A stretch of 64,000 nt of DNA from the NCBI GenBank assembly GCA_002269645.1, contig NIVC01000186.1, positions 372,001-436,000 of the forward strand, read 5' to 3'. The translations under genes were made by a program, and so were the position numbers. The notes beneath the pieces are model-generated. The model ran no database searches. It was not told the DNA's origin and saw only the letters and a program-made list of their open reading frames with translations. The DNA is from Macrostomum lignano. Its lineage: Eukaryota. This document shows positions 15,314 through 59,907 of the stretch, piece by piece. Position 1 is the first letter of the stretch. The number at the start of each line of letters is the position of its first letter.

Positions 15314-19329
<4,016 letters not shown>

Positions 19330-19838: not shown

Positions 19839-20771
19839 GTTGCCTTTGAATTCAAAAGTTTCAACTCATTTGAACAAATATAAAATCGATTTCTATATTA
19901 TTTAAATGGACCTTTCCGCCGTAGTCTAACTCTGCGTACGGATGCGTTCGCACCGTAACGGCTTTACGCACTTATTTAAAAACTTTTAAATTCTCTTTCT
20001 TCATTGAAAACAGCAAGAGTAAACATTCATATGAAAATTGCAATTTTGTGCCTCTATTTTTCGCTTTTTTTACTTTTCGTTTGTATTTATCAATTTTAGC
20101 AGTTTTTCTACTGATCTGAATTTTTAGCCCAGCTTAGCTAATCATGCAATACTCGGAAATCTCTTTTTATCGCAATTTCCCGAATATTTACAAATCAGTA
20201 GTTGCTACAGTAGTATTTAGCATACAACATGCTTATTTTGTATTTAACCAACAAATATTTCATTTATTATAGCGACATGCCGACATTTCCTGTCGCTTCT
20301 GCTTTCCTAACAGTAGCTACTAACGAATCTGCATTCCCTTTCTCCGAATTAGTATTTTGGCTATTCTCTGTCATTCTTTACCAGCAACTCATTCAATTAG
20401 TCAATTCGTGCAAAAATGCTTTTTAGCCAGATATTCAAACTTTGAAACATTGTAACAAACTTTTTTATCAAATATATTATTTCAAGTTCTTCCACCCATG
20501 AAGACACGGACTCTGCTCTGTAGAGAATTAGATTTTACCATTTTTCGGCTCTGCCACCTGATTTTGGCTTCCAGCTGCTCAGATGCTATAATTCTGTTTA
20601 TTAAAGAGCATCAGCGGCAAAGTAAATGCAATGGCATTGATTAATTAGCGATCTGCTTTCATTTATTTTTGTAAGTTGCTTGTACTCAGCTAGGTTTTTT
20701 AGTAAAAAAGACAAATATTTATCTTCTTGACCATTCTCTTCCATTTTTCACCGTCAGGTACTTCAGGCCAA

Positions 20772-21998: not shown

Positions 21999-41714
<19,716 letters not shown>

Positions 41715-42605: not shown

Positions 42606-45492
42606 TCAGGTAGCAGTGCCGTTGACATTTTCGTCGTTATCAGCTGTCGAATCGTTGCGACCATCAATGTCAGACCGCCTGACTGGCGGTGCCGCTTCGG
42701 TGTCGAACTTTTCTTCAAAAGACAGCACTTGACGATTAAGCAGTCGGGGCGCTAACAAAGAAATAAGAATGGCGCCAAGGGGCGCAGTTATAACAATGGC
42801 TAGCACGGACACTGTCAATATCTGGGCACCCATGGCCTGAGCTTTGGGTCCGGCGCCGGTTCTGCAAGTTGAATAAATTGGTTTGGGCATTGTGGTTAAT
42901 TTAATGTTAGCAGATTCCGGACTAATTCGGCCTTTGTCGGTGCCACTAACCTTACGACGTATGTATCGCACCTTTTAGTGCAGAACTAACTCCTAGTATT
43001 TCTTTGTGTGGGCACCGTGGCGCAACGCCTTCGGCGGCATCGGTTAGACAATTTTATCCATTTCGAAGACTCCTGAGCACACACAAACGCACGGATACTG
43101 TGTGCCGACATCCAATCATACCTACGCTCACACAGAGTGTACAGCGGCTCTTGACTTTTTTCGTTAGGCATGTACACTTTCTGTGCCTTGGGGTTGGCTC
43201 TCGTGGGTGTGAATTGAAACCCTCAACCAATTTTTTTAAGTACATTCCACAAATAAATGTGGCCACGCCGCACAGAATTGAAACAGATCGAGAGCACCGC
43301 TGAATTGCTTTCCCCCTAGAAGTACTCTGACCGAACGCACCTGTAGGCAGTGTCCAACACGGCTGGCCCAATAACAGCCTGCACGGTGGCCTTGGGCAGC
43401 CAGGCAAACGGAATGAAGAATCGCTCCCTTACGGTGAAACCCGCCCCAGTCACGGCGACAAACGCGGCAATCATGCGGAACAGCAGTCCGATGAACAGCG
43501 TGGCCAAGATATAACCGATAGCGTCGGCTTGAAGGCTCCCAACGTCGATTTCAAAGCCGATAAGGCCGAAAAGCATCGGCTGCGCGATCCTCCAGCAGAC
43601 TTCCAGCTGGAAAGCGGGTTGTGATTGAAATTGCCATCAATTTAAATATTCCTGCCCTTAATAATCTATGTTGGCAATCAAGGAACAATCCCTACAAAGG
43701 AACAACCCTACAAGGAACAATCCCTACAAGGAACAATCCCTGCAAGGAACAATCCCTACAAGGAACAATCCCTACAAGGAACAATCCCTACAAGGAACAA
43801 TCCCTACAAGGAACAATCCCTGCAAGGAACAATCCCTACAAGGAACAATCCCTACAAGGAACAACCCTACAAGGAACAACCCTACAAGGAACAATCCCTA
43901 CAAGGAACAATCCCTACAAGGAACAACCCTACAAGGAACAATCCCTACAAGGAAAAATCCCTACAAGGAACAATCCCTGCAAGGAACAATCCCTACAAGG
44001 AACAATCCCTGCAAGGAACAATCCCTACAAGGAACAATCCCTAGAAGGAACAATCCCTACAAGGAACAACCCTACAAGGAACAATCCCTACAAGGAACAA
44101 TCCCTACAAGGAACAATCCCTAAGATGAACAATCCCTAAGATGAACAATCCCTACAATGAAAAATCCCTACAAGGAACAATCCCTACAAGGAACAATCCC
44201 TACAAGGAACAACCCTACAAAACAATTGATGGAGATCTAAAAAAAGATTGGATCTTATCAGTATTGACTATAACCTCCAGGACGCACCGGTCCTAACAGT
44301 GGATTTTCCTCATCTGACCAGCCATCGCGAGAGCGCCAGCCGATGGCCGCCATGAAAGCGACAGTAAGGCAGGCCAGAGCCCCGGCGCCATGCAGTTTGA
44401 GTGCAACAGAGCCAAGCAGTGAGATGATGCCGCTGGCTAATAGAAAGCAAAATCTGAAAAATAGGAAGCGGCGGTGACCAGCTGGTGGCAGGAACCACAG
44501 CAACACGCCCAGGATGAGTCCAACGACGATGCCTAGTAGAGCTTCTAGCGGGCCGCGGGCGATGGTCAGAGCAAGGCTCTCATTGCCGCCGAACACGACG
44601 CTAAGCAGTACGCCGAACCCTGTAATTGCCAGCACATCGTCGACGCTAGCAGCCGCAATAAGTAGCGTCGGAATCCCCTTGGCAACGCCGTAGCCCTCCG
44701 AGCCGATAGCCAGCATGGATGGCACAACAACAGCCGGAGAAACGGCTGCCAGGACGAAGCCCAATAGGAAACCGTAAGTCCAGGGCAGTTTAAGCAGCAG
44801 GTGGGACGCGAAGCCAATAGTTACAGCCTCGGTTATGCAGGGTGAGAAAGCCAGCAGGACGACGTGCAGGGACAGAGCGCGCAGCCGCTTCGGGTCGAGG
44901 CCCAGACCGGCTCGCAGTAGAATGATGCACAGAGCCACGCTTCGCAGAGTTGACGACAGAGTCTTGTCGATGCCGAGAGCGAATTTCGCCAGAAACGGGA
45001 CGCTGCGCATAAAGCAGCCGGCAATGAGCATGCCGAGCAGTTTTGGACAACGGGGAATCAGACCGAACAGCTCGCCTGTGAGCATGGAAATCGTGAATAC
45101 CAGGTAGAGACCGAACAAGCCGCCAGTGCAGTTCAGCTTCTTTGATGGGGTGCCAGCGTTGGATTGATTTGATTTTGTCGAGTTGCTACTGTTAGTAGAC
45201 TCTGGCAGTTGCGCGTCACGCAAGAGCCAGGCACAGACCGGTCAGGGACCAGAGACCAGAGTGTGGCATACATCAGCAGCAAAATAGTTATGCCAGTTAA
45301 CAGTCTGCCAGTTCGACCGTGGGGCGGGCACAGCAAGTCGTGATGCAGTTTCTGGGCTATGCTAGGGTCGTCTGGCAGCTGGTGCCTCTCTGCAAGGCAC
45401 CAATTGTAGCAAGTTCTGTCGCAGCACCGCGTGCAGGCTGAGGGTGGCTCGGCCATCTCCCTCACTGAACCATCAGGCGGTTCTTTTACTGC
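42606..45492 (-). CDS. NHA2: Na+/H+ antiporter of the NHA (SLC9B) family; exons 45492-44288, 43606-43341, 42861-42606; 1-nt frameshift near 45240-45200; possible upstream exon 47687-47634
   Basis: CPPHG, GLGLD, LAAVSPAVVVP, GIPTLLIAAASVDDVLAI (the NHA-type DD motif), QPMLFGLIG, AWLPKATVQA and AIVITAPLGA. The three exons sum to 3n+2. Orthologue versus paralogue not resolved. Confidence 0.9.
43675..44222. repeat. 16-bp minisatellite (ACAAGGAACAATCCCT) in the NHA intron
   Basis: Tandem copies. Confidence 0.96.
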
Positions 45493-46724: not shown

Positions 46725-47365
46725 GCAGGCTACATCCCCTTACAGGCTAAATCCTCTTGTAGGCTACATCCCCTTACAGGCTAAATCCTCTTGTAGGCTA
46801 CATCCCCTTGCAGGCTACATCCCCTTGCAGGCTACATCCCCTTACAGGCTAAATCCTCTTGTAGGCTACATCCCCTTGCAGGCTACATCCCCTTGCAGGC
46901 TACATCCCCTTGCAGGCTAAATCCCCTTGCAGGCTACATCCCCTTGCAGGCTACATCCCCTTGCAGGCTACATCCCCTTGCAGGCTACATCCCCTTGCAG
47001 GCTAAATCCCCTTGCAGGCTACATCCCCTTGCAGGCTAAATCCCCTTGCAGGCTACATCCCCTTGCAGGCTACATCCCCTTGCAGGCTACATCCCCTTGC
47101 AGGCTAAATCCTCTTGCAGGCTACATCCCTTTGCAGGCTAAATCCTCTTGCAGGCCACATCCCCTTGCAGGCTACATCCCCTTGCAGGCTAAATCCTCTT
47201 GCAGGCTAAATTCCATTGCAGGCTACATCCCCTTGCAGGCTACATCCCCTTGCAGGCTACATCCCCTTGCAGGCTAAATCCTCTTGCAGGCTACATCCCC
47301 TTGCAGGCTAAATCCTCTTGCAGGCTACATCCCCTTGCAGGCTACATCCCCTTGCAGGCTACATC
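46725..47365. repeat. 17-bp minisatellite (GGCTACATCCCCTTGCA)
   Basis: Tandem copies abutting the SINE end. Confidence 0.95.
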
Positions 47366-48933
47366 CATGCACTACGGTACCAATACCATGCACAAAAATC
47401 GTGTGCGTAGGCCTATTTTCTCTTAATGACGGTTGACAACTCGTGAAAAGAGTACGTCTACCAAAAACTCATCTACTCGACCGTGCATGGGTGACAGCTA
47501 CAGTACATTTTATTCTTGGAGCACATATTTTAATGTATTACCCACTTTTTACCCGATTCGCTCGTAAGCTGACGCTTTACAGAGAAAGTGAGTACCTCCT
47601 GAATTCAGCACTAAATCAATTTAATTACCTCACCTTCTGGACTTCCAATAGCAAATTAAGCAAGTATACGTTTGGTCCATGGCGCATTCACAAGGTTGCC
47701 AATTAGTTGAAAGGTTAGAAATGCCAGAAATGAAACCGGCCGGACTAAAAGTATAATTTGGGCAAATTATGTCTCTTACGAAGTATATTGTGAGTAATTA
47801 TTCTAATAAGACTTTTTTAGACTGACAAGTATAGCTATTCGCGGTCAAGACTGTCTGGGGTAGAGCCTTTTTTATGAAGCACAATTTTTGCTATGTACTG
47901 ATGCACATTAACCATGGCCTTGGACCACAGACAGCGGAAGTTAAACGTACTCTAAGAGCTACATGCAGCTCGATTCACTACATTTACGAGCTTACTATCG
48001 GGTAAAAACTTCGAGAATCCGTCTAAAAAGGATGTTGAAATTGATAAATTGGTAACTAATCTTGGCCAACATGGCGAATAAGAAAGAAATCCTAAAACTT
48101 TTTGATCGGATTAATATATATTTGGCTTCCTCGTAAATTCACACACTTCCTCAAACTGAGTTGGTGCAAATAATAAGTATAACTGTTCACGATTAATTTA
48201 AACTTCTGGACTTCTTTAAGCAAATGAGGAGATAAGGTAAAAAGCTTATCCATCTACTGTATACTGAACAAAGAAAGGGCCGTCAGACCAAAAGTTTCCC
48301 GATAGAGCAGCAGGTCAAGAATAATGCATCCTCGCCCAACCAATCAGAACTTCAAGCTGCCGCGGTGTGACCATGCAGGAAGTTCACTGCAGTGACCGAG
48401 AAAACCAGGCAGGGTGCTGCCGCTATTCTTAGACGATGAATGCTGTTTGCTTCTGTTAGTCGATGATTATATCTGATATCTGGGGAGTCTTAGTCGCTGA
48501 CTCGATATACATGTATGACGAGGGGCCGGCAGCCCTTTTTTCGTATGAAGGGGAGGAAATGAGAGTTGCGAGCGGGTCGGCAACGTTAGTGGCCGTGAGC
48601 AGGACAGGTCAGAATCCTTAGTAGTCCTTAAGGCTTCTCCGTCCAAAAAGTATAAGAGCTATTGCCCTTGTATTGCCCGCCAATATTTTTCTTCTTCTTC
48701 CCGACGCGCCATAAGAAATAATCATAAAATCAATAAAAACGAGATAAAAGCAGACTAAGGACAAAGTTACTTATTATTTTTTATTGAATTTCAGTGTTAT
48801 ACAATCTACTGGTGTTCATTTATTCGTTTGGATTTGCACAATCGTATCATGATGAATGTGCCATATTGTTTAATATACGAGTACACTGCACTTTATGCCG
48901 ACGGATCAAATGATACTAAAATCCGTTTTCTTG

Positions 48934-49178
48934 GCACGCGAAGGTGTATTCAGCACGCCAGTGAAGTATGAGACAGACTAGGCCTATAGGCTACGGTCTG
49001 CGATGCTTCACCCCTGCCCCTATCTTTGGCAGGTCAAGGCTGGTGGGAGGTCTGCACCCTCTATTTGCCTCTGGCAGCCGCAGACCCCCCCCCCCACGCT
49101 GTCTCGCAAGTCGACCCAGGGTACTCGTCCCCGCGTGTGTTCAAGGCAGACCCTAGGGCTGCTGGACAGACTGGGCTC
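48934..49178 (+). ncRNA. HDV-like (delta) self-cleaving ribozyme with a ~170-nt J1/2
   Basis: P1 48934-40/49132-38 (G1-U wobble); P2 49113-18/49172-78; P3 49119-21/49129-31; L3 UACUCGU; P1.1 AC/GU; P4 about 49141-66; J4/2 CAGAC with catalytic C at 49167. Confidence 0.8.
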
Positions 49179-49453
49179 CGGCGCTGGCGACCCTATCCAG
49201 TGGCTTCGGCCGAATTTGGGTATGCGGGTCTGGCTCGCCAACCTGCAGGCCGTAGTACTGCTCAACGTACTCTCTAATGCCTAAGGTGTTGACCGTGCCG
49301 ATGGGCTGGAAGGCCGGGGAGTAGTCCGGTCGCAAGCGGTCCCCCTCCTGGTGTCGGGCCAGCCTTGAGGGTTCTATTGGCCTACTGCCCGGTCAGGTGG
49401 AGCGGCCGGGTGGGTACCGCGCCCCTTTGAGGGTAGCCCACCAACCTTTTATC

Positions 49454-50872
49454 ATGGCCTTCGAGCCGACTATGGATAACCAAGCTTTTTCTAGGGACGG
49501 GGACCCTTCTAAACCCCAACCTCAGTCCGAAGGACCGGCCGGCCCTGCTGGCAGATCCCAACCGACTGATTCAACTGTGGCAAAGGAAGGACCGGCTGGC
49601 TCTGCTGGCAGATCCGACCAGAGCTACCAAACTCAAAATGCCCAAAGACCTGCCAGCTCCGCTGGTGGATCTAAGGGAACCGCGAGCTCTGAGCCTAAAG
49701 GACCGGCCAAATCTGGCAGATCCGATGAAGCTCAGCGGGCTCGGCTTGAGCGCAAACGCGCTAAACAACGCGCCAAAAGGCAGGCCAAGCAGGGAGCTGC
49801 GGGGGCCAAAGCGGCGGCGTCCACCATGGATGCTGAAGCGACTGGAGTCCCAAGGCAACCAGGCGGGCCGGCCGGTGGAAGCTCCAGTAGTTCAGCGGCG
49901 GCGCTCCCCGGAGCTGCTGCCGCGGCTGCTGAGGCCGAAACCACGACGCAACAAATGGCCACTGCCAACAAGGAGGTTCCTTCGGGAGCTACCTTTGCGG
50001 CGAAGGCCAAGGCCAAAATCCCGGGAGTGATCATCCAAGGTCGTGACCAGGACTGGACCACTGATCAGCTTCAAAAAGTGTGGAGTGCTGTTGACTCCTA
50101 TCTGATTGGGCTGACTGTCGAGGAGGGAATCTCAATCGGCATTGGGCGGATGGTGCTGCGAAGCACATTCGTTCTTATTGCTCCTAGCAGCGAAGAGGAC
50201 GCTCGGCAGCTGCTCCAGCGGCTACCGACGGTCTCCTTGGATGCTGACCTTGGCGGAGCTCTTTTTCTTCGCGAGGGCCAGCGTCCAAAGACGATACCCT
50301 ATGTGGTTTTCGTCCCTGCTAAGAGCACCGCAGCTGGACCAGACGTTATCCGCCGGGTCCTACTGCGTCTGAACCCCGACCTCCCTGCTAGTGAACTGGT
50401 GTATCACCGTAAAGTCCGCAGGGGGGAGACGGGCAACTCAATTGTCCTCGGCCTTTCCAGCACTTGGGCGAGTCGGTACCCTAATGGATCCTCTTTCCAG
50501 CTGGGTGCCCTCAAGCTCAAGATGCGCCGAGGAAAGTCTGCCAAAGGGAAGGCTACTGCCAACCCCGGCATCTCCGGCAAGAGCGGGGCGCAGTCTAAGG
50601 CCCAAGGAAAGGCGCAAGCCGATCCCAAAGCCAAAGCTGCATCTCGCCCCTCTGCTAGCAGCAGTTCGGCGACCGCGGTAACGGCTCCGGCCAAGCCCCG
50701 GGAACCAAACCTGCTAGTCGGAGAAGGAGTTGAGGACGAGGCCGGGTCTTCGGAATCCGAGCTCTCCTCGGCCACCCTGGTGGGGTCTGAAGGTAAAGAT
50801 GCAGATGAGGAAGCTTCCTCCATCCTGTCATCGGAGCCTGAGGACTCTGCTGGGGGGGGGCGGTGGGGGTGA
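49454..50872 (+). CDS. LINE ORF1 (basic, low-complexity N-terminus; no clear CCHC knuckle)
   Basis: Open frame 49397-50872; first ATG at 49454; lies 5' of ORF2 inside the TSD-bounded element. Confidence 0.8.
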   Translation: MAFEPTMDNQAFSRDGDPSKPQPQSEGPAGPAGRSQPTDSTVAKEGPAGSAGRSDQSYQTQNAQRPASSAGGSKGTASSEPKGPAKSGRSDEAQRARLERKRAKQRAKRQAKQGAAGAKAAASTMDAEATGVPRQPGGPAGGSSSSSAAALPGAAAAAAEAETTTQQMATANKEVPSGATFAAKAKAKIPGVIIQGRDQDWTTDQLQKVWSAVDSYLIGLTVEEGISIGIGRMVLRSTFVLIAPSSEEDARQLLQRLPTVSLDADLGGALFLREGQRPKTIPYVVFVPAKSTAAGPDVIRRVLLRLNPDLPASELVYHRKVRRGETGNSIVLGLSSTWASRYPNGSSFQLGALKLKMRRGKSAKGKATANPGISGKSGAQSKAQGKAQADPKAKAASRPSASSSSATAVTAPAKPREPNLLVGEGVEDEAGSSESELSSATLVGSEGKDADEEASSILSSEPEDSAGGGRWG

Positions 50873-50999
50873 GGAGGCCATGGACATCGACCAACTCCCA
50901 TCTCCCAGTCAAGCCCCAGCGGCCTGGGACGAGGACGATCTGTTGTCCAAGTCACCTTGATGGCCCTGGGCTCTAGCCAGACATTGCATTTAATACAGT

Positions 51000-53900
51000 A
51001 TGACTAAGCTCCACGCTGCCAAAGGAGCGACATTCTGTCTGCAAATAAATTTACAGCATTGCGTATCTGCGTCAGTAAATCTGATGAAGATTGCTGAGCT
51101 GTACAGGCCAGGCCTCATCCTGATCCAGGAACCCTGGATGCGCAACGGTAAGTTGCCCAACATTCCCTCTGGCTACTCTGATTTTTATGTGTGTGGCCCG
51201 GGGAACAGCCGCCCTAGAGCGGCTATCCTCGCTGCTAGCCATCTCCAGGCTTGGCTGAGGACTGATCTCTCTGATGGAGACCTTTGCGTCATCCAATCTA
51301 ATCATCTCTCTCCGCGTACGTGTCTTGTTGCCTCGGTTTATATCCCAGGCGACAGAGACCCTGCTCCCGAGAGTTTACTGCACCTTGCGCAGTACTGCGA
51401 GTCCCAGAACGCTGAGCTGTGCTTAGGGGGCGACCTCAACGCGCACCACAAGCACTGGGGCAGCAAAGATACCAACACTAGAGGAGAGGAGCTTCTGGCC
51501 CTCATCTCTAACACAAACCTCATGCTCTGCAACCGCGGCAGCACTCCTACCTTTAATAATGGCAGATGGACCGAGGTCCTCGACGCCACACTCGTTACCC
51601 CAAGACTCTTTGACAGAGTTGAGGAGTGGAGAGTCTGGTCTGAGGAGCCCTCCCTGTCTGACCACTGCTTTATCGCCTTTAACATCGCGGACACTAAAAC
51701 CCAGTCTCCGATCACTTGGAGGCGCAATATCCGCAACACTGATTGGGCGGCCTACAAGGCTGCCCTTGATCTGCACCTGCAGGAACTCACGGACTTACGT
51801 CCGATTGAGACCTGCGAGGATGTGGATCATATGGCTGTGACGCTGACAGGTTGCATTATTGCAGCCTACGAAGCGGCTTGTCCTGCTCGCGTCTACAAAG
51901 GCAAGACCTCGGCGCCGTGGTGGAACCCGGAGCTGGGGAAACTCAGGCGGAAGGCCAAAAGCCTTCATCGCCGTGCCATGAAGACCGGAAACCCGGAGGA
52001 CATGAAGCTTTTCCGGCAAGCCTCCCGCAATTTCAAATCTGAAGTGCGCAAGGCCAAGGAATGTAAGTGGCGCCAATTCTGCAATGAATTGGATCAAGAC
52101 AGACCTACTTCTAGGCTTGTCAAGGCCCTTACAATGGACAAAATGTCCAAATTAGCCATGATCAAAAAAGATGATGGCTCTCTTACTAAAGACTCTGAAG
52201 AAGTGCTTCAGCATATGCTCAGCACATTCTTCCCGAGGGTACCTACTGCTAGACCGGAGCCCAACCATTCGATGGATGGAGCCACCCTAGCGGCGGGCAT
52301 TGTCACTGAAGACCTAATCGCTCGTGCGGTCAGAACCTTCAAACCCTTCAAATCTCCTGGACCTGATGGTATCTACCCTGTTCTCCTTCGTGAAGCAGCC
52401 AAGATACCCTCGTTCCTGAGACTCACCCGCAATCTTATGCGGGCCTCTATCCAGCTGGGATACGTTCCCAAATGCTGGACTGAAGCTCGGGTAGTCTTTA
52501 TTCCCAAACCTGGGAAGGGTGACTACCAAAGCGTCAAGGCCTTCCGGCCTATTAGCTTAACGTCAGCAATGCTTAAGCTCACTGAGAGGCTTATTCTCTG
52601 GCGGCTGCTGTCCTGCGAGCTGACAGCGATGCCCCTCAACAATAATCAGCACGCCTTCCGTACCGGGAGGTCGACTGACAGCGCCCTGCATGCGATTGTC
52701 GAGAAGATTGAAAGGGCGGTACTGGGTGACGGTTACGCTCTGGCTCTCTTTCTTGACATTGTTGGCGCCTTCGACAACGTTATCTTTGAAGCGTTTCAAA
52801 GATAACCCCAAGGCGGAGTCCTCACCCCGACGCTCTGGAACCTGGTCATGGACGCTCTTCTGAGTGACTCCCGACCCGACCCCGTCTTCAAAGTCGGGTA
52901 TGCTGATGACGTCACGGCCATTGTGGCAGGACCGTCTCCCAGCACGCTCAGGGATCTGATGCAGAGCTTTATCTGCAAAGCAGAATCCTGGGCCAATGAC
53001 AATGGTCTGAAACTCTCTGAGCCCAAAACCGTTGCCATTATGTTTACCAGCAGACTACGCTGGAACATACGTCCTCTGCAGCTCTACGGCAGAGATATTG
53101 CCTTCGCGCACCAGACCAGATGTATCGGGGTCACACTTGACCACCGGCTCAACTGGTCCTCCCACGTGAAAGCAAAAGCCAAGCGTGCCTCAGCCATCCT
53201 GGCCCAGCTCCGACGAGCACTTGGCACTTCTTGGGGTCTATCCCCAAAGCGGCTTTGGTGGATCTACACTTCCGTAGTTAGACCTGCCATTACGTACGCC
53301 TCGGTTGTCTGGGTTAGCGCTACCCAGGTCAAAAGCCATGCAGACCTGCTCAACACGATCCAAGGCAGAGCGTGTAGGCTCATCTGCAACGCCACCAGGT
53401 CCACGCCCTTTGCTGGCATGGGGGCCTTCCTTAATCTACCGCCTCTTGACCTCTTCGTCAGGGGTGAGGCGGCTAGAACGACGCGGCGTCTAATTGATGC
53501 CGGCGTCAAATTCATTTACATGAGAGCACCTGCTAAGCGGAACCTTGTCCCGCATAGCGACCTGTGCCTCAACTTTCTCAACGAGTGTCAGGCCAATCGC
53601 GTCTTCACCGATGGCATTGCCTCAACGCTCAACCTGAGACAGCGCTACTCCGTAGCTATCGACTCGCGCGATAACATCAATGACCAATGGAACCTTGGTA
53701 AGCTTCATTACTACACCGACGGTTCTAAGCAGTCAGCCAACACCGGCTTTGGTGTTGGAATCTTTCTGAACGGGAGGGTCATCGCTACCCACGCTCAATA
53801 CACTGGGGTCAACTCCAGTGTTTTCCAAAATGAAGTTCTGGCCATCAGCTCCTGCACTGCAGAGCTTCTCGCCACTGGCGTTATTGGCAAGAACATCATT

Positions 53901-54620
53901 TTCCATTCGGACAGCCAAGCTGCCTTGCACGCCATCAGTGGCTGCAGCACCAACTCTGCTACCGTCCTCGACTGTATCAAAATTCTCAACGTGTTGGGTT
54001 CCGCCAACAAAATTACCCTTAAGTGGGTTCCGGGGCATGTGGGGATCCGAGGAAATGAGCTGGCTGACACCCTTGCAAAAGTTGGTGCCTCCGGCTCCTC
54101 TCTCGGCCCCGAACCTCTTGTCCCGATTCCTGGCTGTGTCATCGACTCGCGCATCAAAGCGTGGATCAGGACTCAGCACCGCTCGACTTGGGCGAACCGC
54201 ACGAACTGCAGGCAATCCAGAGGCGCTGTCCCTCAGCCCTCTCACCAGCTCCGGAAGCTCCTCTTGCGCCTCTCGCGCAGAGACATCCGGGCTGCCTCCA
54301 TGACCCTCTCTGGTCACGGCTGCTTCTCCAGGCACCAGTACCTGCAGGGCAACGCCACCAACGCCACCTGTAGTTTCTGCAACTCAGGTGACGAAACCAC
54401 TGAGCATTTCGTCAGCATCTGTCCCGCCTTCACGCGGGCCAGACTCACTTACCTCGGGCCACACAAATATATTACTGAAGCGTGCAAACCCGAAAACTTT
54501 AATCAGCTCATGCGCTACCTTCGGGCCACCCGCAGGGCTGAACTCTCCTTTCCAGAGAGCACTATAGCTGCTGGCGACACTGGGGGACCTCCCTGGGCGG
54601 CGCCAACCCTCCGTCCATAG
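51000..54620 (+). pseudogene. LINE ORF2 (APE endonuclease, RT, RNase H, C-terminal Cys/His finger), split by a deletion/frameshift at about 52803
   Basis: QINLQH, IQEPW, GGDLNAHH and SDHC (APE); FRPISL, LDIVGAFD, PQGGVL and YADD (RT); YTDGSK, SDSQAAL and WVPGHVGIRGNELAD (RNase H); CSFC...ETTEHF..C. Confidence 0.92.
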
Positions 54621-55034
54621 CGACGCGTCGGCCGTTCAGGGATTAGCGGAATGGGCGCCCGCGCCTTTCCGCTGTGTCCCTTCCGGGACAGCCCTGCAGC
54701 TAAGTCAAAGTAAGTCAAGTCCGTTTTCTTGTTGCCAACTTTAATCTCGCGCATAAGTTAGTTTTTTGTCACATTAGTTTTTGTCTTTATATACTACATT
54801 ATTTTAATTTGCGAAAAAATGATGTTATTAATCATCAGAATTATGTTTTCCTTTAAAATATAAATCAGGAAGTAAACAGTAGTTTTTGCATAGGCCAAAC
54901 AATGAGCAATTTATTACTATTAATGCTACTTCTACTACTACTACTGTAAATTTTGTGTATGTTCTCTAAGTTTAATATATCGCATCGGTTGCCATAAAGC
55001 CACCAAAATTTTTTTAAATTTAATTCCGCGTTTG

Positions 55035-58514: not shown

Positions 58515-59907
58515 ATGCTGCCAGTCTGTGACACGCCAAACTGTGGCAAAGAGGCCAAATTTCGGTGTCCAACCTGCTCCAAACTGGGCATCGAAGGCTC
58601 ATTCTTCTGCACGCAGAACTGTTTCAAAGGCTACTGGAAAGAGCACAAGAAGGTGCACGCACTGTTTGAACAGTTGAAAAATCAGGGTGCCGCACCACTG
58701 GGAGGCGACTTGTCGCAACCGCTGATTGTGAGTCATCAGTCAATCATTCTAATGTGCATTGGACTGACACTTGATCAAATAGCATGGAATATGGATTAAT
58801 GACATCGACGAATTGATTAATGACATGGAGTGTGGATTAATGACATGGACTCTGGATTAATGAAATGGACTGCTGATTGATGACATGGACTATTGATAAA
58901 TCTTGTGGACTGTACGATCAGTTACTGCCATGAACGGTCAACTCGATGTCTACGGTCGTTTTTACTCTGCTCCCCAGGTGTCCTGGCCCGGCTACAATTT
59001 CACTGGCGACCTGCGCCCCTACCGTCAGAGTCCCCGGCGCCAATTGCCGGACACCGTGACCGGCCGACCGGACTACTGGCGCGACGGCACTCCGTATAGC
59101 GAGCGCCAGGACAAGGGCCTGCTCAGGGTGCTCGGCGACGAGGAGCAGGAGGATATGCGCATTGTCTGCCGGCTGGCTCGCTAAGTGCTGGAGGAGGCGA
59201 TGCGGGCGGTCGAGCCCGGTGTCACCACGGACGCGATCGACCGACTGGTGCACGAAGCCAGCATCGAGCGAGACTGCTATCCGTCTCCACTGAACTACTA
59301 CGGTTTCCCGAAGTCCTGCTGCACATCCGTGAACGAAGTGATCTGTCACGGCATCCCGGATATGCGGCCACTGGCCGATGGCGATATTGTTAACATCGAC
59401 GTGACCTGCTACCATCGGGAGCATCACGGCGACCTCAACGAAACAGTGTTTGTTGGCTCAGTAGACGAGGAGAGCCGCAGGCTGGTCCAAGTCACCTGGG
59501 AGTGCCTGCGCAAGGCTATCGAAATGGTTAAACCGGGCGTACGTTATCGCGACGTTGGCGACGTAATTCAACAGCACGCCCACTCGGCCGGCCTGTCGGT
59601 GGTGCGCACCTACTGCGGTCACGGCGTCCACCGGTTGTTCCACTGCGCGCCGAACGTGCCGCACTACGCGCGCAACAAAGCCGTCGGCGTGATGAAGCCC
59701 GGCCACGTGTTCACAATCGAGCCAATGATTAGTCAGGGCGAATGGAAGGACCAGCTGTGGCCGGACAAGTGGACATCGGTCACTTTAGATGGCAAACGTT
59801 CGGCCCAGTTTGAGGATACGCTGCTAGTGACCGAGACCGGTTGCGAAGTCCTCACTAGGCGCTCGGTTGACGATGGTAAACCGTTTTTTATGTCTCAGCC
59901 GGCTTAG
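58515..59907 (+). CDS. METAP1: Methionine aminopeptidase 1 (N-terminal zinc finger + M24 domain), exons 58515-58727 and 58978-59907; in-frame TAA at 59182-59184
   Basis: CDTPNC...CPTC...[13 protein letters not shown]; [40 protein letters not shown] and SAQFE. 380 codons if the TAA is read as sense. Confidence 0.95.

What the first reader, a model, noticed from the sequence alone, without database searches (positions are those of the whole stretch)
48934..49178. HDV-like self-cleaving ribozyme starting exactly at the first base of a TSD-bounded LINE
Seen: the base after the left TSD (G48934) begins GCACGCG, which pairs fully with CGCGTGT (49132-38) and gives the G1-U wobble typical of delta-ribozyme cleavage sites. 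Directly upstream of P1' lie P3 GGG/CCC and L3 UACUCGU, which keeps U20 and G25. L3 has AC where CC is usual, and P1.1' is GU where GG is usual, so the pair is a compensatory change. A P4 hairpin follows (GCAGACCC..GGGCUGC), then J4/2 CAGAC (catalytic C49167) and a P2 of GACCCA/UGGG(C)UC. Established: HDV-like ribozymes process the 5' ends of R2, RTE, R4, L1Tc and some LOA-clade retrotransposons. Inference: this family frees its 5' end by self-cleavage, which would explain the precise full-length 5' junction. The ~170-nt J1/2 and the non-CC P1.1 could hide it from standard searches. P2 is the weakest helix (one bulge).
Basis: partly seen in the sequence, partly recalled or inferred. Interest (0 to 1): 0.85.

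Follow-up and report, generated by a model that had tools for sequence, protein, structure and literature searches.

The report
Delta-like ribozyme heading a flatworm LINE
The first 245 bases of a nearly intact jumping gene (a LOA-type LINE) in the flatworm Macrostomum lignano have every sequence hallmark of an HDV-like self-cleaving RNA whose cut site is exactly the element's first base; this is a new example of a known trick, and cleavage itself has not been tested.

Summary
A 5786-bp LOA-clade LINE (48934-54719) lies between perfect 12-bp target-site duplications. Its first 245 nt fit the HDV-like double pseudoknot: P1 7 bp with G1·U, P2 6 bp with one bulge, P3 GGG/CCC, L3 UACUCGU, P1.1 C-G plus A-U, P4, and J4/2 C49167-A-G-A. 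My descriptor recovers the validated drz-Agam-2-1 ribozyme and hits the window's 128,000 start positions twice: this site and an AT-rich chance hit. A hit starting at element base 1 occurred in 2 of 60,000 dinucleotide shuffles of the 5' UTR. The rate in real DNA is 2-5e-5 per position. No chance hit also had G1·U, the L3 C-G and an all-GC P3. The 172-nt J1/2 is within the known R2 range. Rfam models miss the site. Covariation could not be tested because no M. lignano DNA was reachable. One second copy, seen only as a protein translation, keeps all visible core positions (p=0.11, not significant). Six distant LOA relatives show no motif. Verdict: very probably a genuine HDV-like 5'-processing ribozyme, a new member of a known kind; catalysis is unproven. 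Interest is moderate.

The parts
48922..48933 (.). Left target-site duplication TCCGTTTTCTTG
   Evidence: Identical 12-mer at 54720-54731. The bases on either side differ, so the duplication cannot be extended.
48934..54719 (+). Full-length LOA-clade non-LTR retrotransposon (5786 bp). It is GC-rich in an AT-rich flank and has no poly(A); the 3' end carries two copies of TAAGTCAA (54701-08 and 54711-18).
   Evidence: TSD; ORFs and Pfam domains APE, RT and RNase H; ORF2 is 31-38% identical to Lian-Aa1-like proteins; single copy in the window.
48934..49178 (+). Candidate HDV-like self-cleaving ribozyme (245 nt). The predicted scissile bond lies between G48933 and G48934.
   Evidence: Descriptor hit; shuffle and real-DNA nulls.
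48934..48940 (+). P1 5' strand GCACGCG
   Evidence: 7/7 pairs with 49132-49138, with G1·U at the base. No extension is possible, because G48933 faces G49139 and A48941 faces C49131. Duplex energy -10.4 kcal/mol.
48941..49112 (+). J1/2 peripheral domain (172 nt), containing a C11 run at 49085-49095
   Evidence: Folded alone it forms a closed multibranch domain whose ends are brought together (48944-46/49105-07 and 48951-54/49098-49101), z = -2.2. This closing helix is essentially absent (pairing probability 0.05 or less) when the whole 245-nt RNA is folded in a pseudoknot-free ensemble. The C-run is 12 in a second copy. R2 J1/2 loops reach 216-498 nt (PMC3774820).
49113..49118 (+). P2 5' strand GACCCA
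   Evidence: Pairs with 49172-49178 with C49176 bulged; -5.2 kcal/mol, or -7.8 if G49119-C49171 is added.
49119..49131 (+). P3 (GGG/CCC) enclosing L3 UACUCGU (49122-49128)
   Evidence: L3 shares U1, C3, C5, G6 and U7 with the L3 of the validated drz-Agam-2-1 (UCCACGU). A conserved C and G in L3 are required in R2 ribozymes (PMC3774820).
49132..49138 (+). P1 3' strand CGCGUGU, directly abutting P3'
49139..49140 (+). P1.1 3' strand GU, pairing with C49124 and A49123 of L3
   Evidence: A49123 and U49140 are both retained in the second copy (Tyr and Phe codons).
49142..49164 (+). P4 hairpin (core 49146-49162, loop CUAG, A49150 bulged; possible outer pairs C49142-G49164 and A49143-U49163)
   Evidence: Pairing probability 0.94-1.0 in a J1/2-trimmed construct.
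49165..49171 (+). J4/2 with the catalytic-position C49167 followed by A-G-A (C-N-R-A pattern)
   Evidence: C49167, A49168 and A49170 are retained in the second copy, and 49169 is constrained to a purine by the Gln codon.
49172..49178 (+). P2 3' strand UGGG(C)UC
49454..50872 (+). ORF1 (ATG at 49454; the open frame begins at GTG 49397)
   Evidence: 86-99% identity to pieces of M. lignano UniRef proteins.
51000..54620 (+). ORF2 (APE, RT, RNase H) interrupted by one in-frame stop at 52803-52805
54720..54731 (.). Right target-site duplication TCCGTTTTCTTG

Best explanation
The first 245 nt of this Macrostomum lignano LOA-clade LINE encode an HDV-like (delta-type) self-cleaving ribozyme.

Proposed mechanism:
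- The element is transcribed as part of a longer RNA, by read-through from a host or upstream promoter; an internal promoter is also possible.
- The nested double pseudoknot forms. P1 stacks on P1.1 and P4, and P2 stacks on P3. The 172-nt J1/2 domain may hold the outer ends of P1 and P2 together.
- C49167 in J4/2 acts as the general acid/base together with a Mg2+ bound at the L3 U·G site.
- The chain is cut 5' of G48934. The product is an RNA with a 5'-OH whose first base is the first base of the element, with the folded ribozyme kept at its 5' end.
- Reverse transcription of that RNA to its end gives new copies that start at G48934, which explains the exact full-length junction next to the TSD.

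Shown here: the helices, the conserved nucleotides, the exact coincidence with the TSD boundary, and the statistical excess over chance.

Inferred: folding in vivo, catalysis, co-transcription, and any role in translating ORF1.
For: 1. All helices and junctions are present in canonical order with no spacer between P2/P3 or P3'/P1'.
2. My descriptor recovers the kinetically validated drz-Agam-2-1 (sequence from the supplement of PMC4908430). It finds only this site plus one AT-rich hit in 128,000 start positions of the window.
3. P1 starts exactly at the TSD-defined first base. This happened in 2 of 60,000 dinucleotide shuffles, and the rate is 2-5e-5 per position in 1.3 Mb of real DNA.
4. Features not in the descriptor are also canonical. 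G1·U occurs in 12% of chance hits, C-G at L3 positions 5-6 in 9%, and an all-GC P3 in 30%. None of 241 chance hits had all three.
5. Energetics are competitive. The best nested fold containing all of P1 is -96.6 kcal/mol, against an MFE of -98.3. The nested part with the P2 and P1.1 strands held free is -90.5, to which P2 adds -5 to -8.
6. The context matches known biology. Baggins, R4, Dong, RTE and L1Tc ribozymes cut at the element's 5' end, and P1-P1' spacing in R2 ranges from 23 to more than 700 nt (PMC3774820, PMC6765202).
7. A second M. lignano copy is visible through the read-through translation A0A1I8GBL0. It has no indel in the core and no visible change at 23 constrained first and second codon positions, including A49123, U49140 and C49167. 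Its 5 visible changes fall in the J1/2 tail, L3 position 4, P4, the nucleotides before the catalytic C, and downstream sequence.
Against: - No covariation test was possible, and the single second copy gives only p = 0.11.
- There is no hit to any Rfam HDV-like model, even on the core alone.
- Six LOA-type relatives (31-38% ORF2 identity) have no convincing motif upstream of ORF1.
- P2 has a bulge. J4/2 has G where A77 is usual, plus an extra C.
- A competing nested helix (G49139-C49167 to A49143-U49163) would sequester P1.1' and the catalytic C. It has pairing probability 0.6-0.9 in pseudoknot-free ensembles.
- A near-duplicate of the P1 strand (GCACGCC, 48953-48959) could compete for P1'.
- Given a core match, the rest of the descriptor is completed by chance in 9 of 120 GC-rich loci when the P1 position is left free. 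The argument therefore rests heavily on the exact 5'-end coincidence.
- This copy carries a stop in ORF2 and might also carry ribozyme mutations.
Confidence: 0.66

Rival explanations
1. The HDV-like fold is real and inherited but is not, or is no longer, catalytic. Either this copy or the whole family carries an inactive variant that survives as a structured 5' element, for example for binding the element's proteins, protecting the 5' end or promoting ORF1 translation. In that case the 5' end is set by a transcription start.
For: - The deviations lie at sensitive places: A-U in P1.1, G at the A77-equivalent, a bulged P2 and an extra J4/2 nucleotide.
- Some R2 elements with a correct fold do not cleave in vitro, for example the sow bug and horseshoe crab elements (PMC3774820).
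- This copy already has a nonsense codon in ORF2.
- A strong competing helix sequesters C49167.
Against: - The invariant positions reported for retrotransposon ribozymes (the L3 C and G, and the catalytic C) are all present.
- P2 mismatches occur in about a third of active R2 ribozymes (PMC3774820).
- The validated drz-Agam-2-1 also has a very low P1 probability in nested ensembles.
- The exact P1/5'-end coincidence is what cleavage predicts. A purely structural role would not need it.
Confidence: 0.2
2. Chance resemblance. A GC-rich structured 5' UTR happens to satisfy a permissive descriptor, and the precise 5' end comes from an internal promoter that starts transcription at element base 1, as in many LINEs.
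For: - The descriptor gives chance hits: one in this window (20016), and 9 of 120 core matches complete by chance when P1 is free.
- No Rfam match.
- No motif in distant relatives.
- No covariation data.
Against: - The probability of a hit that starts at base 1 is about 3e-5.
- It falls by a further factor of roughly 100 or more once G1·U, the L3 C-G and the all-GC P3 are counted.
- The L3 matches a validated ribozyme at 5 of 7 positions.
Confidence: 0.12

Closest known systems
Baggins1 5'-end HDV-like ribozyme (Drosophila; LOA clade by my own knowledge; cited in PMC3774820 and PMC6765202 after Ruminski et al. 2011)
   Same: An HDV-like ribozyme on the sense strand at the extreme 5' end of a LOA-type APE/RT/RNase H LINE, with cleavage at the element's first base.
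   Different: A different phylum (a flatworm rather than an insect). The sequences could not be compared because the Baggins sequence and the Ruminski paper are not held here. ORF2 of the nearest named relatives is only 31-38% identical.
R2 retrotransposon ribozymes (Drosophila, silkmoths, planaria and others; PMC3774820)
   Same: The same double-pseudoknot architecture. P1 is 6-7 bp and P2 is at least 5 bp, often with mismatches. There is a conserved C and G in L3 and a catalytic C. J1/2 is very long (216-498 nt in silkmoths), and P1-P1' spacing runs from 23 to more than 700 nt. The function is 5' processing of a co-transcript.
   Different: R2 is site-specific for 28S rDNA, has a single ORF with a restriction-like endonuclease, and often cleaves upstream in the 28S sequence. 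This element is dispersed, has two ORFs with an APE, and cleavage is predicted exactly at base 1. P1.1 here is C-G plus A-U.
drz-Agam-2-1 (RTE-associated, Anopheles gambiae; PMC4908430)
   Same: A large HDV-like ribozyme with a structured J1/2 domain that activates catalysis. L3 is U-N-C-N-C-G-U in both, P3 is 3 bp and abuts P1', and J4/2 follows C-N-R-A. Both are recovered by the same descriptor.
   Different: Agam-2-1 has G1-C rather than G1·U, a GG P1.1 strand, an uninterrupted 7-bp P2, a 44-nt J1/2 and a much longer P4. This candidate has a 172-nt multibranch J1/2 and a short P4.
L1TcRz (Trypanosoma cruzi L1Tc; PMC3185411, PMC3383444)
   Same: An HDV-like ribozyme in the first nucleotides of an APE/RT/RNase H LINE flanked by 12-bp TSDs, cutting at +1.
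   Different: L1TcRz is compact (77 nt) and also acts as an internal promoter. No promoter function can be judged here.

Membership tests
HDV-like (delta-type) self-cleaving ribozymes | Nested double pseudoknot in the order P1-J1/2-P2-P3-L3-P3'-P1'-P1.1'-P4-J4/2-P2', with a roughly 7-bp P1 and a 3-bp P3 abutting P1' | tested here: met
   All helices are at the stated coordinates. The descriptor hits this site, and the same descriptor finds the validated drz-Agam-2-1.
HDV-like (delta-type) self-cleaving ribozymes | Conserved L3 nucleotides (a 5' U, the C that forms P1.1, and C-G near the 3' side) and a P1.1 pseudoknot | tested here: met
   L3 is UACUCGU. C49124-G49139 and A49123-U49140 form P1.1. 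L3 matches drz-Agam-2-1 at 5 of 7 positions. The second P1.1 pair is A-U rather than the usual C-G.
HDV-like (delta-type) self-cleaving ribozymes | Catalytic cytosine at the first position of J4/2, followed by N-R-A and then the P2 3' strand | tested here: met
   C49167-A-G-A is followed by one extra C49171 before UGGG(C)UC. The C-N-R-A rule is from my own memory of the Luptak-lab descriptors. That the catalytic C is the first J4/2 position is stated in PMC10879173.
HDV-like (delta-type) self-cleaving ribozymes | The match is more than chance | tested here: met
   2 of 60,000 shuffles start at nt 1. The rate in real DNA is 2-5e-5 per position. None of 241 chance hits has G1·U plus the L3 C-G plus an all-GC P3.
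HDV-like (delta-type) self-cleaving ribozymes | Helices supported by compensatory changes among homologues | not testable with these tools
   No other copy's DNA was reachable. One translated second copy is compatible but not significant (p = 0.11).
HDV-like (delta-type) self-cleaving ribozymes | Match to a curated covariance model (the Rfam HDV, CPEB3 and drz families) | tested here: not met
   No hit at the gathering threshold or at E of 10 or less on the window, on 48800-49400, or on the core 49108-49185. These models are narrow sequence families, and the 172-nt insert falls inside P1.
HDV-like (delta-type) self-cleaving ribozymes | Mg2+-dependent self-scission 5' of the first P1 nucleotide, abolished by changing the catalytic C to U | not testable with these tools
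   This needs a bench assay.
5'-terminal processing ribozymes of non-LTR retrotransposons | Sense-strand ribozyme at the extreme 5' end, with the cleavage site at the element's first base (or just upstream) | tested here: met
   The 12-bp TSD fixes base 1 at G48934, which is the first P1 nucleotide.
5'-terminal processing ribozymes of non-LTR retrotransposons | The host element is an autonomous non-LTR retrotransposon | tested here: met
   ORF1 plus an ORF2 with Exo_endo_phos_2, RVT_1 and RNase_H domains. Relatives are Lian-Aa1-like.
5'-terminal processing ribozymes of non-LTR retrotransposons | A homologous ribozyme in related elements of the same clade | tested here: inconclusive
   Six loci with 31-38% identical ORF2 (L001-L006) show no convincing motif upstream of ORF1 and no Rfam ribozyme. 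Their true 5' ends are unknown and their UTRs are not alignable.
LOA clade of non-LTR retrotransposons | Two ORFs; ORF2 with APE, RT and a C-terminal RNase H; nearest relatives are LOA, Lian or Baggins elements | tested here: met
   Domains. The best named hit is the 'lian-aa1 retrotransposon protein'. No phylogeny was made, and assigning Lian to the LOA clade rests on my own knowledge.

The most novel reading that the evidence does not exclude
This may be the founding example of an overlooked subclass of HDV-like ribozymes. Its features are an A-U second pair in P1.1, a G at the A77-equivalent and a large multibranch J1/2. It would be invisible to Rfam models. If so, ribozyme-mediated 5' processing would be much more common among LOA/I-type LINEs of flatworms and other spiralians than catalogues show, and would be the main way these elements make exact full-length 5' ends without their own promoter.
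Probability: 0.3. Interest if true: 0.55.

Novelty: new member of a known kind. Interest (0 to 1): 0.4.

Why it matters
HDV-like ribozymes at LINE 5' ends are established for R2, R4/Dong, RTE, baggins and L1Tc. I found no paper mentioning one in Macrostomum lignano, and for Schistosoma mansoni the non-LTR elements had no ribozyme association until twister variants were found (PMC8501958).

If this one is active:
- It extends ribozyme-based 5' processing to a dispersed LOA-type LINE of a free-living flatworm model in which transgenesis is available.
- It gives a natural test of an A-U pair in P1.1 and of a 172-nt J1/2 'pinch' domain.
- It shows that model-based annotation (Rfam) misses such ribozymes, whereas descriptor searches anchored on TSD-defined 5' ends find them.
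- It would explain how this young family makes exact full-length copies. Other copies are 78-99% identical at the protein level, and this copy has only one stop codon in ORF2.

Tried and rejected
- Rfam at the gathering threshold on the window, and at E of 10 or less on 48800-49400 and on the core 49108-49185, found no ribozyme family.
- A search for other copies in the window (27-mer with 3 mismatches, blastn, tblastn) found none.
- Look-ups of the window's ORF1 (GTG and ATG starts), of ORF2b, and of the M. lignano proteins P0003 and P0061 in the contig index found none on record.
- A metagenome scan with the ORF1 C-terminal domain found nothing.
- A metagenome scan with the degenerate core GGGTACTCGTCCC-N7-GT returned 120 chance loci in GC-rich prokaryotic DNA. 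I used these only to calibrate false positives.
- A genome-contig scan with the 23-mer core found nothing.
- Six LOA-type relatives were fetched (L001-L006). The strict descriptor gave one AT-rich hit in L006 (731/1013) with two G·U pairs in P1 and a weak P3, which I rejected as chance. The variant-B descriptor found none upstream of ORF1. A very relaxed descriptor gave hundreds of hits and was discarded.
- The second window hit at 20016-20350 was rejected. It lies in AT-rich sequence, has two G·U pairs in P1 and is not linked to any element.
- Low P1 pairing probability in pseudoknot-free ensembles was considered as evidence against and rejected, because the validated drz-Agam-2-1 behaves the same way.
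- A protein search with the 93-aa frame across the ribozyme found nothing. The 83-aa frame found one second copy.
- The Ruminski 2011, Webb 2009 and Eickbush 2010 papers are not held.
- I did not write out or use any sequence of the hepatitis delta virus itself. Comparisons use residue names and non-viral ribozymes only.

Full report
**What is at the coordinates**

- P1: GCACGCG (48934-48940) pairs 7 of 7 with CGCGTGT (49132-49138), with a G48934·U49138 wobble at the base. P1 cannot be extended in either direction.
- Directly 5' of P1' lie P3' CCC (49129-31), L3 TACTCGT (49122-28) and P3 GGG (49119-21). The P2 5' strand GACCCA (49113-18) comes just before them, with no spacer.
- After P1' come G49139 and U49140, which pair with C49124 and A49123 of L3 to form P1.1.
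- Next is a short P4 hairpin (49146-62).
- J4/2 contains C49167 followed by A-G-A.
- The P2 3' strand is UGGG(C)UC (49172-78), with C49176 bulged.

Minor corrections: J1/2 is 172 nt. P4 can be drawn two pairs longer at its base (C49142-G49164, A49143-U49163), which leaves a 1-nt J1.1/4. C49171 is either a fifth J4/2 nucleotide or pairs with G49119.

**The element**

The 12-mer TCCGTTTTCTTG occurs at 48922-33 and again at 54720-31, and the bases on each side differ. The insertion is therefore 48934-54719 (5786 bp), and G48934 is its first base.
- ORF1 runs from the ATG at 49454 to 50872.
- ORF2 runs from 51000 to 54620 and has APE, RT and RNase H domains. It is interrupted by a single in-frame stop at 52803-05.
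- The 3' end has no poly(A). It carries two copies of TAAGTCAA.

The ORF1 hits are 86-99% identical to pieces of Macrostomum lignano UniRef proteins, so the window comes from that flatworm. The best ORF2 relatives are 31-38% identical, and the named ones are Lian-Aa1-like. By my own knowledge Lian belongs to the LOA clade. Several M. lignano gene models contain pieces of this family at 78-99% identity, so the family is multicopy and young.

**Is it more than chance?**

I wrote a descriptor with these requirements:
- P1 of 7 bp.
- J1/2 up to 300 nt.
- P2 of at least 5 bp, with one bulge allowed.
- P3 of 3 bp.
- L3 of 7-8 nt with U at position 1 and C at position 3.
- A 2-bp P1.1.
- A P4 hairpin.
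- C-N-R-A followed by P2'.

The nucleotide rules are from my own memory of the Luptak-lab descriptors.

Results:
- It recovers the kinetically validated drz-Agam-2-1 ribozyme, whose sequence I took from the supplement of PMC4908430.
- On both strands of the window it hits twice: this site, and an AT-rich site at 20016 with two G·U pairs in P1 and no associated element.
- In dinucleotide-preserving shuffles of the 463-nt 5' UTR, 0.6% have a hit anywhere. Only 1 of 20,000 and 1 of 40,000 have a hit whose P1 starts at base 1.
- In about 1.3 Mb of real DNA (both strands) the per-position rate is 2-5e-5.
- Features outside the descriptor are also canonical. G1·U is seen in 12% of chance hits, C-G at L3 positions 5-6 in 9%, and an all-GC P3 in 30%. 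None of 241 chance hits had all three.

A sobering calibration: among 120 metagenomic loci that contain the same P3-L3-P3'-N7-GU core by chance, 9 complete the rest of the descriptor when P1 may lie anywhere within 500 nt. The weight of the argument therefore lies in the exact coincidence of P1 with the TSD-defined 5' end.

**Structure and energetics**
- The nested part of the ribozyme fold (P1, P3, P4 and the J1/2 domain, with the P2 and P1.1 strands held free) is -90.5 kcal/mol, against -98.3 for the pseudoknot-free MFE. P2 adds -5 to -8 kcal/mol.
- The best nested fold containing all of P1 is -96.6 kcal/mol.
- Folded on its own, J1/2 forms a closed multibranch domain that brings its two ends together (z = -2.2). 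That resembles the 'pinch' by which J1/2 domains activate large HDV-like ribozymes (PMC4908430). However, this closing helix has a pairing probability of 0.05 or less when the whole 245-nt RNA is folded, so the pinch is only a possibility.
- In a J1/2-trimmed construct, P1 has pairing probability 0.8 and P4 more than 0.94.
- In the full-length pseudoknot-free ensemble P1 has only 0.06. The validated drz-Agam-2-1 has 0.03 in the same test, so this is not evidence against.

Two real caveats remain. A nested helix (G49139-C49167 to A49143-U49163) would sequester P1.1' and the catalytic C. A near-duplicate of the P1 strand (GCACGCC, 48953-59) could compete for P1'.

**Comparative evidence**

This is the weak point. 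No M. lignano DNA other than the window could be reached.

Searching the 83-aa frame that runs through the ribozyme core found one protein, A0A1I8GBL0 (M. lignano). It is a read-through translation of a second copy covering 49075-49254.
- Codon by codon over 49095-49193 it has five replacements. These imply U49111C (J1/2 tail), U49125C (L3 position 4, a variable position), G49158A (P4; its partner C49151 is a silent third position), G49165A (before the catalytic C) and C49188G (outside the ribozyme).
- None of the 23 visible constrained positions changes. These include A49123, U49140, C49167 and the first and second codon positions in P1', P2 and P3.
- There is no indel in the core. The C-run in J1/2 is 12 rather than 11, and one base is missing just downstream of the core.
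- This is what a ribozyme predicts, but the enrichment is not significant (hypergeometric p = 0.11).

Six LOA-type relatives from other organisms (L001-L006) have no convincing motif upstream of ORF1 and no Rfam ribozyme. Their 5' ends are undefined and their UTRs are not homologous, so this neither supports nor refutes the interpretation.

**Comparison with what is known**

R2 ribozymes tolerate the following (all from PMC3774820):
- 6-7 bp in P1.
- Mismatches in P2, seen in a third of elements.
- A highly variable P4.
- P1-P1' separations from 23 to more than 700 nt.
- J1/2 of 216-498 nt in silkmoths.

The long J1/2 here is therefore not exceptional. It does explain the Rfam misses. The L3 matches that of drz-Agam-2-1 at 5 of 7 positions.

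The unusual points are the A-U second pair of P1.1, a G at the A77-equivalent, an extra J4/2 nucleotide and the bulged P2. I found no paper linking M. lignano to any HDV-like ribozyme.

**Verdict**

- The main rival is that the fold is present but catalytically dead, in this copy or in the family (about 0.2).
- Chance resemblance is the second rival (about 0.12).

It is a new member of a known kind, of moderate interest. The decisive tests are alignment of genomic copies for covariation, in vitro cleavage with C49167U and P1.1 swap mutants, and 5'-OH end mapping.

Noticed in passing
window 48953-48959: GCACGCC is a 6/7 near-duplicate of the P1 5' strand, 19 nt downstream of it. It could form an alternative 6-bp P1 with 49133-49138, which would place cleavage 5' of G48953. 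In the predicted folds it is tied up in a small hairpin with 48943-47.
   Followed up: partly
window 49085-49095 and 49191-49193: An 11-C homopolymer sits inside J1/2. A second M. lignano copy (A0A1I8GBL0) appears to have 12 C there and a 1-nt deletion just downstream of the ribozyme. Indels therefore flank the core but do not enter it.
   Followed up: partly
window 52803-52805: A single in-frame stop codon in the RT domain (…FEAFQR*PQGGVL…) is the only visible defect of ORF2. The copy is young but probably not autonomous.
   Followed up: yes
window 49139-49167: A nested helix (G49139-C49167, U49140-A49166, U49141-G49165, C49142-G49164, A49143-U49163) extends P4 and would sequester the P1.1 strand and the catalytic C. 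It may be an inactive alternative conformer.
   Followed up: partly
window 20016-20350: A second hit of the HDV-like descriptor lies in AT-rich sequence (P1 AAGAGTA/TATTTTG with two G·U pairs, P3 GCA/TGC). It has no nearby ORF or element and was judged to be chance.
   Followed up: yes
window 143-63644 (e.g. 24456-25975, 28981-30636, 36442-37280, 46725-47366): The window holds about twenty unrelated micro- and minisatellite arrays with periods of 4-93 bp, some longer than 1.5 kb. These account for the strong GC/AT-skew blocks at 24-38 kb and for many spurious long ORFs.
   Followed up: partly
window 17180-17929 (+), 44258-45223 (-), 59185-59907 (+): Host-gene exons flank the LINE: a WD40-repeat protein, a Na+/H+ exchanger and an M24 metallopeptidase. 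I could not tell whether the LINE sits in an intron of a plus-strand gene, which would provide a co-transcript.
   Followed up: no
proteins P0001, P0002, P0003, P0024, P0036 (M. lignano UniRef/MetaClust): Public M. lignano gene models fuse pieces of this LINE's ORF1 or ORF2 to host proteins (UBC9, a GPCR, an annexin-like protein). This is either annotation error or a sign that copies are co-transcribed with host genes.
   Followed up: partly
window 54701-54719: The element ends in two copies of TAAGTCAA (10-nt spacing) rather than poly(A). The 3' UTR is only about 100 nt.
   Followed up: no
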